A stretch of 63,355 nt of DNA, filler included, from Octopus bimaculoides (GCF_001194135.2; 6 parts of 5 records of this genome joined end to end with filler, not necessarily neighbours in it); one strand, 5' to 3'; counted from the whole stretch's first letter, positions 13,058 to 20,224 are shown. Translations and numbers: made by a program. Notes: generated by a model from the letters alone, not told the origin.

Positions 13058-13369
13058 GACGGAACCTTGGTGGACCCCTACCTCTACCCGGAATTCATTA
13101 CTGTACTCATTTCCAACCTTCACCTTACTGACAGCATCTCTGTACATGGCTCGCATATAAATATATATATATATATATATACTTTTGGTGCGAATGGTTT
13201 TGTTACACGGCGCCGTATTTTACAATCCTGTAAATAACAATAATGGTATTCTCTTATAAGCTTAAGGCTTCTGGCGATCACCGTGCAATGACTAAGGAAA
13301 ATAGTCTAATAAAGGGGCATATAAGCCCGCGACAGAGAAAAGAAGGCTTTCCTATGCATAACATATGTA

Positions 13370-14234
13370 CACCCAGAACCATGCTAATAGCTTAGCAGTG
13401 AAATTAAAGATTTCTTGGTTTTCTGTGAATCAATTTTGATAAAACTTTTCCCAGCTGCTTTGCACACTATGGCAACACCATTGTTTTGCTTTCATTATTC
13501 TCTGTAATGTCTTTTCTTTTTTATTTTAGATTCTTCAGTTTTTGGGTGAACCATGCAAACAGTGTTTCTCCTCTCTAAGGGACATAGAAAAGGCCTTAAT
13601 GATGAAGAAAAGTCTATCATCATCAAGGGAAGTGCTAAAGACACCTCTCTTCATGTCATTGCAAAGTAAGGCTGTCATGTGGACATGGTTAGATGATTCC
13701 TAAAGAACCCTTCCCCAAGGAAGAAACGATTTGATTGTGGGACCTCCAAAACTGTGACAGTTAAGGATTTAAGGAATATTGGCTACAAGTTATGTGAGAA
13801 ACCTGGACAAACAAGCAAAGCTATTTTCACCGTCTCCAAACTTCCTCAGGTACTAAAAACCATCAGAAATTGCATCCTCTGGACCATGGCTTCTGTCAGA
13901 GAACCCCTGATACTACCCCCTTTCACGCTCCGTCACAGGAGTCTGAGGCTTCAACAGGCCCAAAAGTACATGATGTTAGACATGAGTTGTGTTTTGTTCA
14001 CTGATGAAACCAGACCCTTAACGGTTGGGCAAATGGTTAGATCTATTTTGGAGAAGAGCGTTGTCAATGTTTATGAAATGAAAAAAAGAAAGGATATTAC
14101 AGAGAATAATGAAAGTATAATAATGGTGATGCCATAGTGTGCAGACCAGCTAGGAAAAGTTTTATCAAAATCGAATCACAGAAAACCAAGAAATCCTAAA
14201 TTTCACTCCTAAGCTATTAGCATGGTTCTGTGTG
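13370..14234 (+). mobile_element. Internally deleted Tc1-superfamily (TRT/DD37E-like) DNA transposon with ~150-bp TIRs
   Basis: TIRs 13370-13522 and 14081-14234 are reverse complements (cacccagaaccatgctaatagc...), preceded by TA. Interior encodes a decayed transposase N-half: KGLNDEEKSII...KPGQTSKAIF...PP..RHR..RL..AQKYM..D...VLFTDETR..PNGW. The catalytic C-half is missing. Confidence 0.82.
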
Positions 14235-14330
14235 TGTGTGTGTAGGTAGATAGATATTCATATTAGATTCCACTCAATTAGAAAAGAAAAAAACCCAAAC
14301 ATATGAAATATAAGAACAAAAAATATTTAT

Positions 14331-14903: not shown

Positions 14904-15390
14904 TCACGAAAGTTCTTCCCTTCCATAAGTTTGTAATCTTAGCTCTTTTCTTGTATCAGCTTTTCGAATGAAAACATTGAACATTTCCTTACTTTCAATG
15001 AAAGATTTCCAGAATTCAGGGAAAAACTCCCTTTTCAATAATGCAATCACAGCCTGGGTATCATTGTTAATCTCAGGTTGAGATTGAGTTTTGTTATCAT
15101 CCATTGCATTAACAATTATCAAAAAAGTGATGATGCTTGATGGATATTTGGATAGCATTGTTTTCAGACTTTCATTAATAATGTCATTATAGTCTTCATC
15201 ACATTCAGCAATAATATCAAAATAACGGAAATTATTCTCTGGTATTAAAAGCAATTTCTTCCATTAACGAATTTAAAGTGTTTAAATTAAATGATGTGTC
15301 CCGATCTGGATTACTTCCTCCAAAATGTTCGTGTAATATATCGTTTTGTTTCATTCCTTCCAGAATAAATATTTTCCTTTTGTCTGTTTT
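14904..15390 (-). pseudogene. Disrupted additional copy of the same C-terminal domain, in frame with the CARD ORF
   Basis: After TGA (15393-15391) the same frame reads KTDKRKIFILEGMKQNDILHEHFGGSNPDRDTSFNLNTLNSLMEEIA, homologous to KNKRKVFILAGLTEDEILRECFSGSNPNW. One extra T in a T4 run (15247-15250) shifts into LIPENNFRYFDIIAECDEDYNDIINESLKTML...KEMFNVFIRK...ELS* (stop at 14904). Confidence 0.8.
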
Positions 15391-16578
15391 TCATTCCCAT
15401 GGCTTCTTTTTCATAAAACGGCTTTCCAAATGGAATTTTCCATCAATGAAAATATTGAACATTTCGTTGTGTTTGAAGAAATCTTCTATGAATTCATGCA
15501 AGAACTTTTTTTTCAATATTCTAAAGACAGGTTTGAAAATCTGAGCATCACCAAAACTCACAGGTTTTGTGTCAGAATGAAAAACATAACCATTATCATC
15601 ATTCCAATCAACAATTATCAAAAATGTGATGATGCTTGGTGGAAATATTGGTAAGAGCTCTTTTTCAATACGAGGTATCATTTTTTTCAAACTTTCATAA
15701 GTAATGTCATTAAATTGATCATCACATAAAACAATAACATCAAAAAAACAGAATTTATTTGGAGGTATAGAATCAAGTCTATCCTTTAATTTACTTACAG
15801 AGCCTAAAAGAGTTGATACATTCCAGTTCGGATTACTTCCTGAAAAACATTCACGTAATATNNNNNNNNNNAAGAACTTTTTTTTCAATATTCTAAAGAC
15901 AGGTTTGGGAAACTTAGCATCACCAAAACTCACAGGTTTTGTGTCAGAATGAAAAATATAACCATTATCATCATTCTCATCAACAATTATCAAAAATGTG
16001 ATGATGCCTGGTGGAAATTTTGGTAAGAGCTCTTTTTCAATACTAGGCAAAATTGTTTTCAGACTTTCATTCGTAATGTTATTATAATCTTCATCACATA
16101 CAACAATAATATCAAAATATCTGTAAGTATTTTCTGGTATGGAAACAATTTCCTCCTTTAATTTGCTTACAGAGCCTAAAAGAGTTGATACATTCCAGTT
16201 CGGATTACTTCCTGAAAAACATTCACGTAATATTTCGTCTTCGGTCAGACCTGCCAGAATAAATACTTTCCGTTTGTTTTTTGCTCGCGGCATTGGTTTT
16301 TCTTGAACAACTTCGCTTTTCATTTCCGTCTGGAATATTTTCATTAAGTGTTCGTTGCTTGTTTTGCAAAGAATGTCCACGAACGTTTGAGGAGAACAAT
16401 TTCTTTTTTGTAAAATGTCCAACATTTTCCGAATGCTGTTGCTGTCTGTATTTTGTGATTTTATAATTTCGTAATTTCTAGTTGTGATATGGCCACCAGA
16501 CTGTAAATAATCCAGAACATCATCGATTTGAGTGAGATTCTTGACAATTTGTGGTAAAAGTTTCACGTAAACATTCAT
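15391..16578 (-). CDS. Intronless CARD-domain protein with C-terminal caspase-like (probably catalytically dead) alpha/beta domain(s)
   Basis: First ATG (aaaATGa) at 16578. Residues LLPQIVKNLTQIDDVLDYLQSGGHITTRNYEIIKSQNTDSNSIRKMLDILQKRNCSPQTFVDILCKTSNEHL follow the six-helix CARD pattern (16578-16330). A linker leads to a domain starting RKVFILAG at 16272. The ORF crosses a 10-N gap (15862-15871) with a 362-bp duplicated, diverged segment on each side, so the true length is ~270 aa (alleles) or longer (tandem copies). CARD call is strong; the caspase-fold call is by-eye motif spacing only. Confidence 0.8.
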   Translation of the reverse strand: MNVYVKLLPQIVKNLTQIDDVLDYLQSGGHITTRNYEIIKSQNTDSNSIRKMLDILQKRNCSPQTFVDILCKTSNEHLMKIFQTEMKSEVVQEKPMPRAKNKRKVFILAGLTEDEILRECFSGSNPNWNVSTLLGSVSKLKEEIVSIPENTYRYFDIIVVCDEDYNNITNESLKTILPSIEKELLPKFPPGIITFLIIVDENDDNGYIFHSDTKPVSFGDAKFPKPVFRILKKKFXXXXILRECFSGSNPNWNVSTLLGSVSKLKDRLDSIPPNKFCFFDVIVLCDDQFNDITYESLKKMIPRIEKELLPIFPPSIITFLIIVDWNDDNGYVFHSDTKPVSFGDAQIFKPVFRILKKKFLHEFIEDFFKHNEMFNIFIDGKFHLESRFMKKKPWE

Positions 16579-17060: not shown

Positions 17061-17650
17061 CGTACCGACAATTAATTCGATACTTTTTTGGTTATCTTAC
17101 CCCTATTAAAAAATTGTATTATTTCCTCTCTTCCCACCACGTTTTACGAGAAATAGCGGTACTTCTGATTATCTCTTTCAACTAAAAAAATTGTTTAACC
17201 CCCAATAAAACCAAAAAAAAAAAAAAGTGGAAAAATTAATAAACAGAAAGTGAAACGAAACATCGTTTTGAATCTGATATTTTTATAACAAATCATACAA
17301 AACGGGAAAAATAAATAAACGTGATAAACGAAAAGAGTAAACATCTTAATGAATTAGATAATATTTTTATAACAAATCATACAAAACTGAAAAAATTAAT
17401 AAACATGAAAACTGAAATGATTAAACATCTTACTGAATCTGAGATAATTCTATAATAAATCATGGAATGCCTATTGAGGGGGCCAAACATCAACAATGTG
17501 TTGAAATATTGAATCAAAAAGATCTCTTTTAATCCAATTTCTTGTCACCACATTCACTCGATTTTTTAGTGGGGAGATAACCAAATTTTTCAATGGGAAT
17601 AACCAAGTTTTTTAATGGATAACCAAAAAGTACCATTAATTCTTGTCAGA
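17061..17650. mobile_element. MITE-like element with ~30-bp terminal inverted repeats and three internal ~80-bp tandem units
   Basis: Arms ~17067-17096 and ~17618-17647 share gatactt(t)tttggttatc / gataaccaaaaagtacc. Tandem units ~17231-17465 share aaacatc...gaat...at.ttt.tataa.aaatcat. Confidence 0.5.
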
Positions 17651-19826: not shown

Positions 19827-20224
19827 GTTTACCGTCTGCTTTCCATGCTGACATGGGTTGGACGGTTTGACCAAGGACAGGCAAGCCAGTGGACTACAGC
19901 AGGCTTCAATCTGATCTGGCAAGGTTTCTACAGCTGGATGCCCTTCCTAACCCCAACCACTCCAATAGTGTAGTGGGTGCTTCGAACATGTTTAGAAGGT
20001 GCCTTTTACATGCCACTGGTATGGGAGCCAGTCAGGGGGCACTGGCATTGACCATGTTTGGATGGGGCATTTTATGTGCCACTGGCACGGAAGCCAGTCA
20101 GGCAGCACTGGCCACGGCTATGATTTCAATTTGATATGACTCAACAGGTCTTCTCAAGCATATATCACCTGATGCTTCAAGGATACTTTTAAATGGGCTG
20201 GTCATGCAACACTGGCATTGGCCA
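19827..20224 (-). mobile_element. SINE family C ((GAT)n-tailed)
   Basis: Shares ctttccatgct..catgggttggacg...ctacagctggatgcccttcctaac with 38053-38345 and 54100-54380. Confidence 0.75.

What the first reader, a model, noticed from the sequence alone, without database searches (positions are those of the whole stretch)
15500..16233. Two versions of the domain differ almost only by amino-acid changes in one patch (possible hyper-divergent alleles or recent paralogues)
Seen: 15500-15861 and 15872-16233 are both exactly 362 bp, align without gaps and flank a 10-N gap. My hand count is ~40 nucleotide differences: 27 of ~120 codons change the amino acid and only 5 differ silently. About 20 replacements fall in one 38-residue stretch (EEIVSIPENTYRYFDIIVVCDEDYNNITNESLKTILPS vs DRLDSIPPNKFCFFDVIVLCDDQFNDITYESLKKMIPR), while the first 26 codons differ at one silent site. 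The 10-N gap at 42030-42039 separates a 71-bp exact overlap, so such gaps mark overlapping contig ends here. Inference: these may be two haplotypes of one gene under diversifying or balancing selection, with the variable patch where a caspase active-site face would be, as expected of a pathogen-facing decoy.
Basis: partly seen in the sequence, partly recalled or inferred. Interest (0 to 1): 0.75.

Follow-up and report, generated by a model that had tools for sequence, protein, structure and literature searches.

The report
Two versions of an octopus CARD-gene repeat
Two 89%-identical copies of one protein-domain segment sit either side of an assembly gap in an octopus CARD gene; they are most likely the animal's two gene copies written twice, and their divergent patch is an old, recombined sequence type rather than a proven case of adaptive amino-acid change.

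Summary
Segments 15500-15861 (A) and 15872-16233 (B) are each 362 nt, align without gaps and differ at 40 sites (27 replacement codons, 5 silent-only). The coding strand is minus.

The gene is a single-exon Octopus bimaculoides gene, the positional orthologue of one member of a CARD-gene cluster in O. sinensis and O. vulgaris. It encodes a CARD followed by 174-residue repeat units that match no Pfam family. Their predicted fold weakly but reproducibly resembles caspases, and the His/Cys dyad is absent.

The selection claim fails. dN/dS is 1.45 (p=0.27), and 33 of 40 changes are non-synonymous against 32 expected by chance. Silent changes cluster in the same patch (dS 0.28 versus 0.02, p=0.0075), so the patch has an older history.

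Its 60-nt core groups with the first unit of the O. vulgaris orthologue (99% bootstrap), while B groups with O. sinensis. Those two species also show about 11% divergence in this unit against roughly 1% in the flanks.

The literal in-frame read-through (372-nt spacing) is an artefact of the 10-N placeholder. I favour unmerged alleles (0.5) over adjacent tandem units with about 160 bp hidden in the gap (0.3). Only reads can decide.

The parts
16234..16578 (-). Start of the gene. It holds the ATG (16578-16576), the CARD (aa 9-82, about 16333-16554), a linker, and the first strand of the repeat unit (KNKRKVFILAGLTEDE).
   Evidence: Pfam CARD PF00619, E=2.9e-10, 40.5 bits against a cut-off of 23.9. 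Translations. The segment is 85.5% identical to O. sinensis g3.
15872..16233 (-). Copy B, the 'alpha' version of the first-type repeat unit (ILRECF...RILKKKF). It is contiguous with the CARD.
   Evidence: Its patch is closest to the first units of relatives (15/114 differences to O. sinensis g3 d1). dN/dS against that orthologue is 0.38.
15862..15871 (.). Assembly gap of 10 N. Its true length, or a negative length meaning an overlap, is unknown.
   Evidence: The nominal 372-nt spacing matches no unit period seen in relatives, where periods are 519-522.
15500..15861 (-). Copy A, the 'beta' or mosaic version of the same unit. It is contiguous with the tail helices, the stop codon and the terminal unit.
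   Evidence: With O. sinensis g3 d1 as outgroup, A has 25 unique changes against 9 for B (p=0.009).
15670..15783 (-). The divergent patch in copy A (codons 27-64). The equivalent region in copy B is 16042-16155. The 60-nt core (15670-15729 in A, 16042-16101 in B) encodes CDDQFNDITYESLKKMIP in A.
   Evidence: 30 of the 40 differences lie here. dS is 0.28 and dN is 0.335. In the core, A groups with O. vulgaris g3 d1 at 99% bootstrap. Seven sites (eleven if sites where B and O. sinensis also differ are counted) show the pattern A = O. vulgaris with B = O. sinensis, and none show the reverse. In the model the patch spans the end of helix 2, strand 3, the loop after strand 3 and the start of helix 3.
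15391..15499 (-). Tail of the unit (LHEFIEDFFKHNEMFNIFIDGKFHLESRFMKKKPWE), ending in a TGA stop at 15393-15391.
   Evidence: O. sinensis has GGA (Gly) at this codon and reads on into the next unit.
14904..15390 (-). Copy C, the terminal-type unit. It lies behind the stop codon and is broken by a +1 insertion near 15246. Its spacing from A is 523 nt.
   Evidence: The part after the frameshift has dN/dS 0.99 against O. sinensis d3.

Best explanation
The piece carries the O. bimaculoides orthologue of the third gene ('g3') of an octopod-specific gene cluster. Each gene in that cluster is one exon. It encodes a CARD, then one 'first-type' repeat unit of about 174 residues, then 0-10 interior units, then one terminal unit.

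Segments A and B are two versions of the same first-type unit. Most likely they are the two alleles of the sequenced animal. The assembler collapsed the near-identical flanks but kept the 11%-divergent block twice, and the scaffolder laid the two overlapping contig ends side by side with a minimal gap. This is a heterotype false duplication.

On that reading the real gene is CARD + one unit + stop (271 aa), followed by a dead terminal unit. The allele difference is a mosaic. The ends are nearly identical, while the 114-nt patch belongs to an old sequence lineage ('beta'). The core of that patch is also found in the first unit of the O. vulgaris orthologue, whereas B ('alpha') matches O. sinensis. 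Recombination or gene conversion between such lineages produced the pattern, not a burst of amino-acid-changing substitutions.

Shown: the gene, its family grammar, synteny, the mosaic, and dN/dS of about 1.

Inferred: that A and B are allelic; that the unit derives from a caspase fold; and that the protein acts as a CARD-recruited, catalytically dead regulator or bait.
For: 1. Duplicates flush against a gap are a listed hallmark of false heterotype duplication (Ko et al. 2022, PMC9516828).

2. Synteny places both contigs at one locus. The 3.6 kb upstream of the CARD/B contig maps to the g2-g3 intergenic region of O. sinensis and O. vulgaris. The 1.8 kb downstream of the A/C contig maps downstream of g3 (84% identity, against 75% for g2).

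3. Family grammar: in 8 genes of two relatives, the first-type unit ending RIL..KF-LHGF occurs once per gene at most (7 genes), always right after the CARD. Interior units end RIVK.NIF(E/D)DY. Both A and B end RILKKKF, and both begin with the first-type head. Two first-type units in a row are never seen.

4. The same block is hyper-divergent between positional orthologues in two gapless long-read assemblies. O. sinensis against O. vulgaris g3 shows 45 mismatches in CDS nt 303-722, peaking at 17 per 60 nt in the same core, against about 0-2 per 60 nt in the flanks, CARD, d2 and d3. Alternative versions at one position therefore do exist.

5. Type-specific states are shared across species. No other beta unit exists among the roughly 40 unit copies listed, across both relatives' clusters.

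6. A gap written at the 10-N minimum fits a zero or negative size estimate better than +160 (inference).
Against: 1. Genome-wide heterozygosity of the sequenced O. bimaculoides is only 0.08% (PMC7656900). Alleles 11% apart, and 26% apart in the patch, are an extreme outlier.

2. The g3 orthologues in both relatives have three units, as does B + A + C. 362 + 160 = 522 is exactly one unit period, and A to C are spaced 523 nt.

3. Codons 27-44 of A are nearest to interior array units (10 differences against 14-16).

4. Patchy divergence between O. sinensis and O. vulgaris also occurs in g1. Gene conversion among units is therefore common and could mimic shared allelic types.

5. No read depth or read linkage could be examined.

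6. The 271-aa RefSeq model is not evidence either way. RefSeq also splices a whole unit out of the uninterrupted O. sinensis ORF.
Confidence: 0.5

Rival explanations
1. A and B are neighbouring units of a true tandem domain repeat in one gene (CARD-B-A-stop, about 445 aa). The gap hides the tail of B and the head of A, about 160 bp or 160 + n x 522. Their similar ends come from recent duplication or intragenic gene conversion.
For: - Real in-frame tandem units of 519-522 bp are the hallmark of the family: 12 units in O. sinensis g2 and 3 units in g3 of both relatives.
- 362 + 160 = 522, and the A-C spacing is 523.
- Very low heterozygosity makes hyper-divergent alleles unlikely a priori.
- A has a long branch, with 25 unique changes against 9 for B. 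It also has replacements at otherwise conserved positions and an interior-unit affinity in codons 27-44. These fit a redundant second unit.
Against: - Both A and B carry first-type head and end motifs, which occur once per gene in all 7 relatives' genes that have them.
- A shows no orthology signal to the d2 units of the relatives.
- The beta core sits in the first unit in O. vulgaris.
- A 160-bp gap would be expected to be written longer than the 10-N floor (inference).
Confidence: 0.3
2. A and B belong to two very recent copies of the whole gene. The near-identical CARD and 3' parts of those copies were collapsed into one by the assembler, so only the divergent unit was kept twice.
For: - The assembly picture is the same as for alleles.
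- The cluster changes gene number quickly: the fetched loci show 3 genes in O. sinensis and 5 in O. vulgaris, although only about 3.5 kb upstream of the first O. sinensis gene was fetched, so more may lie beyond.
Against: - O. sinensis and O. vulgaris each have one g3 with unique flanks.
- This reading needs flanks still identical while the unit is 11% diverged.
Confidence: 0.08
3. One reading: the patch differs because diversifying or balancing selection drove amino-acid replacements on a pathogen-facing surface of a caspase-like decoy.
For: - dN/dS is at or above 1 between A and B, against about 0.4 between orthologues.
- Codons 65-120 show 9 replacements and 0 silent differences.
- The variable residues lie on the caspase active-site side of the model.
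- Alpha and beta types are shared across species, as expected under long-term balancing selection.
Against: - dN/dS is not significantly above 1: p=0.27, and the simulation gives P=0.42.
- Silent divergence is as concentrated in the patch as replacement divergence (p=0.0075).
- Codon positions are hit 18/11/11, which is the signature of no constraint.
- The downstream unit is a pseudogene, so relaxed constraint is a simpler reading.
Confidence: 0.15
4. The literal reading: a genuine in-frame 372-bp internal duplication of part of the domain, giving one 407-aa ORF.
For: With 10 N the two copies are in phase, and the ORF listing reads through.
Against: - The phase depends on an arbitrary gap length.
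- The second copy would lack its first strand, and the first copy would lack its two tail helices.
- None of the roughly 40 unit copies listed for the relatives is partial in this way, and all periods are 519-522.
Confidence: 0.02

Closest known systems
Heterotype false duplication (unmerged haplotypes placed in tandem around a scaffold gap; Ko et al. 2022, PMC9516828)
   Same: - Two near-identical blocks sit on one scaffold with a gap between them.
- The block is far more divergent than the rest of the genome.
- An annotation pipeline had to skip one copy.
   Different: - Read depth and haplotype-specific k-mers were not testable here.
- The locus also belongs to a family with real tandem units, so the usual shortcut that a duplicate at a gap is an artefact is not safe.
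CARD-prodomain caspases and pseudo-caspases (caspase-9/-1/-2; catalytically dead relatives such as cFLIP or caspase-12; CARD-only decoys)
   Same: - An N-terminal CARD is followed by a domain whose model has the beta-alpha-beta topology of the caspase large subunit.
- The function I propose, a CARD-recruited inactive partner or bait, is how known pseudo-caspases work. This comes from established knowledge and is not tested here.
   Different: - There is no Pfam Peptidase_C14 match even at E<=10.
- There is no PDB match by sequence profile.
- TM-scores are only 0.34-0.53, and no E-value is at or below 1e-3.
- There is no His/Cys dyad: LCD(E/D) follows strand 3 and VDxNDD follows strand 4.
- There is no p10-like second half.
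- The unit is repeated up to 12 times in one ORF, which no caspase does.
Concerted evolution / gene-conversion mosaics in tandem repeat-domain immune-type genes, and trans-species polymorphism (as at MHC or plant S-loci)
   Same: - Phylogeny changes along 360 nt: A+B group at 97% in nt 192-360, and A+O. vulgaris group at 99% in nt 132-192.
- There is a narrow peak of both dS and dN.
- Sequence types are shared across species.
   Different: - Allelism is unproven.
- The shared tract is only about 60 nt.
- No population data exist.
- A conversion donor outside the sampled cluster cannot be excluded.

Membership tests
CARD (Pfam PF00619) | Profile match above the curated gathering score | tested here: met
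   E=2.9e-10, 40.5 bits against a cut-off of 23.9, residues 9-82. There are weak matches to NLRP1 CARD chains in the PDB.
Caspase / Peptidase C14 | Sequence-profile match to Peptidase_C14 | tested here: not met
   No match at E<=1 for the window proteins, nor at E<=10 for 12 units from 4 species. A profile search of PDB sequences gave 0 hits.
Caspase / Peptidase C14 | Catalytic His (after strand 3) and Cys in QACxG (after strand 4) | tested here: not met
   The units have ..IVLCD(E/D).. after strand 3 and ..LIIVDxNDD.. after strand 4. There is no QACxG. The register to caspases is by eye and was not taken from a structural alignment.
Caspase / Peptidase C14 | Caspase-hemoglobinase fold | tested here: inconclusive
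   Two models were built, with pLDDT 73 and 67 and pTM 0.73 and 0.66. Caspases-1/-3/-6/-7/-8/-9 are the top hits, with probability up to 1.00, but E>=4e-3 and TM 0.34-0.53.
Heterotype false duplication | Gap between the duplicated pair on one scaffold | tested here: met
   10 N lie between two flush 362-nt copies. The criterion is from PMC9516828.
Heterotype false duplication | Half read depth and single-copy haplotype-specific k-mers on each copy | not testable with these tools
   No reads are available. No contig is on record for the O. bimaculoides protein.
Heterotype false duplication | A single copy at that position in independent assemblies or relatives | tested here: inconclusive
   Relatives have exactly one first-type unit per gene. 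However, their g3 also has a second, interior-type unit.
True tandem domain repeat of this family | Complete units at a period of 519-522 bp in one ORF | tested here: inconclusive
   As written, the spacing is 372 and both units are incomplete. The feature would be met only if the gap is really about 160 bp. The A-C spacing of 523 does meet it.
Positive / diversifying selection | dN/dS significantly above 1 | tested here: not met
   NG86 gives 1.45 (Fisher p=0.27) overall and 1.20 in the patch (p=0.45). A mutation simulation gives P=0.42.
Trans-species polymorphism | Sequences cluster by type, not by species, with raised silent divergence around the site | tested here: met
   The grouping {A, O. 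vulgaris g3 d1} has 99% bootstrap in nt 132-192. Seven sites support it against none for the reverse. dS is 0.28 in the patch and 0.02 outside.
Trans-species polymorphism | The types are alleles of one locus within a species, and paralogous conversion is excluded | not testable with these tools
   This needs reads or population samples. No beta donor exists in the sampled clusters, but the rest of those genomes was not searched.

The most novel reading that the evidence does not exclude
The first repeat unit of this CARD-pseudocaspase gene carries a balanced polymorphism older than the split of O. bimaculoides from the O. vulgaris/sinensis lineage. Two forms of the loop after strand 3 (the side where caspases have their active site) have been kept for tens of millions of years. 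The reference O. bimaculoides is heterozygous for them despite 0.08% genome-wide heterozygosity.
Probability: 0.2. Interest if true: 0.75.

Novelty: new variant of a known kind. Interest (0 to 1): 0.45.

Why it matters
**Practical consequences**
- The region should not be read as a 407-aa protein, nor as evidence of adaptive evolution.
- The RefSeq models in this cluster are unreliable. They splice out whole repeat units and fuse neighbouring genes.

**Biological interest**
- The piece points to an uncharacterised, octopod-restricted family: a CARD followed by 1-12 copies of a caspase-like but catalytically dead unit, arranged in a fast-changing tandem gene cluster.
- If the two versions are alleles sharing types with O. 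vulgaris and O. sinensis, this would be a rare candidate for long-term balancing selection in a cephalopod cell-death or innate-immunity gene.
- That question can be settled cheaply with existing reads or a single PCR.

Tried and rejected
**Searches and look-ups that gave nothing usable**
- Exact-protein look-up of the O. bimaculoides model P0001 found no contig on record.
- Pfam and PDB sequence searches gave nothing for the repeat unit.
- An exhaustive HMMER search of 1.84 billion representatives found only Octopus proteins, one Argonauta hians protein, and one spurious 33-residue match.
- Tandem Repeats Finder cannot see the 522-bp arrays because its longest period is 500. The repeat finder was used instead.
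- The 2015 genome paper is not held, so the assembler's k-mer size and gap convention could not be checked.
- Pfam found nothing in five flanking ORFs.

**Readings considered and rejected**
- Misjoin with an unlinked paralogue was rejected because both contigs are syntenic with g3.
- Gene conversion from copy C or from any sampled unit as the donor of A's patch was rejected. A's patch is at least 22% from every unit, and the beta core is found only in O. vulgaris g3 d1.
- The 271-aa RefSeq model was rejected as support for allelism. No AGGT exists in the shared head and only one AGGC does. RefSeq makes similar repeat-skipping models in the gapless O. sinensis locus.

**Reasoning that did not work**
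- I tried to infer alleles versus tandem units from the lengths of the identical contig ends (68 nt and 36 nt). They fit no single k-mer size under either model.

Full report
**1. Observation.** Segments 15500-15861 (A) and 15872-16233 (B) are each 362 nt. They align without gaps and differ at 40 positions. Only the minus strand is open in both. On that strand, 27 of 120 codons change the amino acid and 5 differ silently. Twenty of the replacements lie in codons 27-64, and the first 26 codons differ at one silent site. Thirty of the 40 differences fall in one 114-nt window, which none of 20,000 permutations matched.

**2. The gap.** B is 120 codons plus 2 nt. With 10 N the spacing is 372 = 124 x 3, so a mechanical ORF list reads through as 407 aa. 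This phase depends on a placeholder length.

The two sides are not continuous. B ends at ...RILKKKF, which in A is followed by LHEFIEDFF.... A begins at ILRECF..., which in B is preceded by ...KVFILAGLTEDE. A literal read-through would give a second unit without its first strand and a first unit without its tail helices. No unit in any relative looks like that, and all unit periods there are 519-522 bp.

**3. What the gene is.** On the minus strand an ATG at 16578 opens a CARD (Pfam PF00619, E=2.9e-10). The order after that is:
- a linker and copy B;
- the gap;
- copy A and a 36-residue tail;
- a TGA stop at 15393-15391;
- directly behind the stop, a third degenerate copy C (15390-14904).

Only Octopus proteins are close homologues. 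The O. bimaculoides RefSeq model XP_014775104.1 (271 aa) equals the N-terminal part plus A plus the tail, so the piece is O. bimaculoides. An exhaustive search of 1.84 billion representative proteins adds only an Argonauta hians protein at 29% identity. The family therefore appears restricted to octopods.

I fetched the clusters of O. sinensis (L001) and O. vulgaris (L002-L004). Each gene there is one uninterrupted ORF with a fixed grammar:
- a CARD;
- at most one 'first-type' unit ending RIL..KF-LHGF;
- 0-10 interior units ending RIVK.NIF(E/D)DY, with 12 units in all at 519-522-bp spacing in O. sinensis g2;
- one terminal unit.

Both contigs of the window belong to the orthologue of the third gene, g3. 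The upstream 3.6 kb maps to the g2-g3 intergenic region. The downstream 1.8 kb maps downstream of g3, at 84% identity against 75% for g2. A misjoin with an unlinked paralogue is therefore rejected.

**4. The fold.** The unit matches no Pfam family and no PDB sequence. Two AlphaFold models were built from a 12-row alignment of units, using different target sequences. They reached pLDDT 73 and 67 and pTM 0.73 and 0.66. Both give the same topology: four beta-alpha repeats, a poorly predicted loop or hairpin, a fifth strand and two helices.

In both Foldseek searches of the PDB the top ranks are caspases (-1, -3, -6, -7, -8, -9). Probabilities reach 1.00, but E-values are no better than 4e-3 and TM-scores are 0.34-0.53. 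Given the N-terminal CARD, I read the unit as probably caspase-derived (about 0.65), but it is not a caspase by any sequence criterion. LCD(E/D) follows strand 3 and VDxNDD follows strand 4, where caspases carry His and QACxG. That register is by eye only.

The A/B replacements map to the end of helix 2, strand 3, the loop after strand 3, the start of helix 3, the residue just after strand 4 (W in A, E in B, V in O. sinensis, G in O. vulgaris) and the hairpin before strand 5. These are mostly on the C-terminal edge of the sheet, the side of the caspase active site. This is topological inference, not a measured surface.

**5. Selection.**
- Nei-Gojobori gives dN 0.128, dS 0.089 and omega 1.45, with Fisher p=0.27. 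In the patch omega is 1.20, p=0.45.
- I placed 40 random mutations with the observed transition/transversion mix on B. This gives 32.0 +/- 2.4 non-synonymous changes, against 33 observed (P=0.42). Codon positions are hit 18/11/11.
- 'Almost only amino-acid changes' is therefore what unconstrained change looks like in this AT-rich sequence.
- Orthologous comparisons are constrained, by contrast: omega is 0.38 for B against O. sinensis and 0.41 for A against O. vulgaris.

The informative signal is that silent differences are also confined to the patch. Five of the six lie there, with dS 0.28 against 0.02 outside (Fisher p=0.0075). The patch has an older history than its flanks.

**6. Mosaic ancestry.** With O. 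sinensis g3 unit 1 as outgroup, A carries 25 unique changes against 9 for B (p=0.009). A's patch is at least 22% from every sampled unit, with one exception, its 60-nt core:
- The core encodes CDDQFNDITYESLKKMIP in A and CDDQLNGITNKSMKTMIP in unit 1 of the O. vulgaris g3 orthologue.
- It occurs in no other unit copy listed across either relative's cluster.
- At seven sites A matches O. vulgaris while B matches O. sinensis, and no site shows the reverse.
- Neighbour-joining groups A with O. vulgaris at 99% bootstrap in nt 132-192, but A with B at 97% in nt 192-360.

O. sinensis and O. vulgaris g3 differ by about 1% in the flanks, CARD, unit 2 and unit 3. In unit 1 they show 45 mismatches in 420 nt, peaking at 17 per 60 nt in the same core.

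Two old versions of this unit, alpha and beta, therefore predate the species splits and have been shuffled by recombination or gene conversion. Such shuffling is common in the cluster: g1 also shows patchy peaks between the two species.

**7. Alleles or neighbouring units?** The evidence points both ways.

*For alleles (false heterotype duplication, criteria in PMC9516828):*
- The duplicates are flush on a minimal gap.
- Both copies are first-type units at both ends, a type that occurs once per gene in all seven relatives' genes that have it.
- The same block is the one that differs between positional orthologues in gapless assemblies.
- The beta core sits in unit 1 in O. vulgaris.

*For neighbouring tandem units:*
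- The g3 orthologues have three units, as would B + A + C.
- 362 + 160 = 522 is exactly one period, and the A-C spacing is 523.
- The sequenced animal's heterozygosity is only 0.08% (PMC7656900).
- A's codons 27-44 lean towards interior units.

The RefSeq 271-aa model is not evidence either way. RefSeq also removes a whole unit from the uninterrupted O. sinensis ORF and fuses g2 and g3.

I put alleles at about 0.5, tandem units at 0.3, and a collapsed recent gene duplicate at 0.08. Without reads this cannot be settled.

**8. Likely function (inferred).** The CARD should recruit the protein into CARD-CARD assemblies. The attached unit or units lack a catalytic dyad. They would then act as inactive partners or baits, as pseudo-caspases and CARD-only proteins do. 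Arrays would give multivalency.

In O. bimaculoides the gene looks partly decayed. A TGA replaces the GGA of O. sinensis, a +1 insertion breaks copy C, and copy C evolves at omega 0.99. Relaxed constraint is therefore a simpler explanation than adaptation for omega near 1 between A and B.

**9. Verdict.** The selection claim is unsupported, and the position question (alleles versus adjacent repeats) remains open. Relative to what is known, this is a new variant of known kinds: a CARD-pseudocaspase architecture, gene-conversion mosaics, and a duplicate flanking an assembly gap. Interest is moderate. It would rise to high if reads show that the two versions are alleles and population data show both types within species.

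Noticed in passing
window 15391-15393 and about 15246; 14904-15390: The ORF ends at a TGA where O. sinensis and O. vulgaris have GGA and read on into the terminal unit. That unit (copy C) also has a +1 insertion. After the frameshift it keeps an open frame to the orthologous stop but evolves at dN/dS 0.99. The third domain therefore looks pseudogenised in O. bimaculoides, unless these are assembly errors.
   Followed up: partly
L001 9998-16521 (O. sinensis): One gene carries a CARD plus 12 tandem units at 519-522-bp spacing, with interior units 95-99% identical. A single 521 spacing near 13400 shifts the frame and splits the ORF. The O. vulgaris counterpart is called as 1821 aa.
   Followed up: partly
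L001 10001-26894; proteins P0002, P0005, P0010: The RefSeq models of the O. sinensis cluster look wrong. LOC118768009 isoform X2 joins the CARD and head of g2 to unit 1 of g3 across about 15 kb. Isoform X1 drops unit 2 of the uninterrupted g3 ORF. LOC118768007 is a CARD-less piece of the g2 array.
   Followed up: partly
window 19828-20224: A 397-nt segment is 90-91% identical to intergenic segments upstream of several cluster genes in O. sinensis and O. vulgaris. That is more conserved than the coding sequence (82-85%). It could be part of the duplicated gene unit, a conserved regulatory piece, or a young repeat.
   Followed up: no
window 13369-13522 and 14082-14235: A 154-nt inverted repeat (90% complementary, 559 nt apart) lies downstream of the gene. 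The surrounding 1.1 kb is 87% conserved at the same position downstream of g3 in both relatives. The enclosed ORF has no Pfam match.
   Followed up: partly
window 17277-17448: Two copies of an AT-rich 84-bp tandem repeat (87% matches) lie in the upstream region.
   Followed up: no
codon 86 of the 362-nt segment (A 15604-15606, B 15976-15978): The residue just after strand 4 is W in A, E in B, V in O. sinensis g3 and G in O. vulgaris g3. By eye this is the position of the catalytic Cys of caspases (IIVD-x against IIQA-C). This was not checked by structural alignment.
   Followed up: no
protein P0008 (Argonauta hians GAB1602176.1): A 490-aa protein with a CARD-like start and two units at 27-30% identity shows that the CARD-plus-unit architecture predates the genus Octopus. 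Cys61, Asp56, Ile58, Leu96 and Val99 of the unit are invariant across all 12 aligned units.
   Followed up: partly
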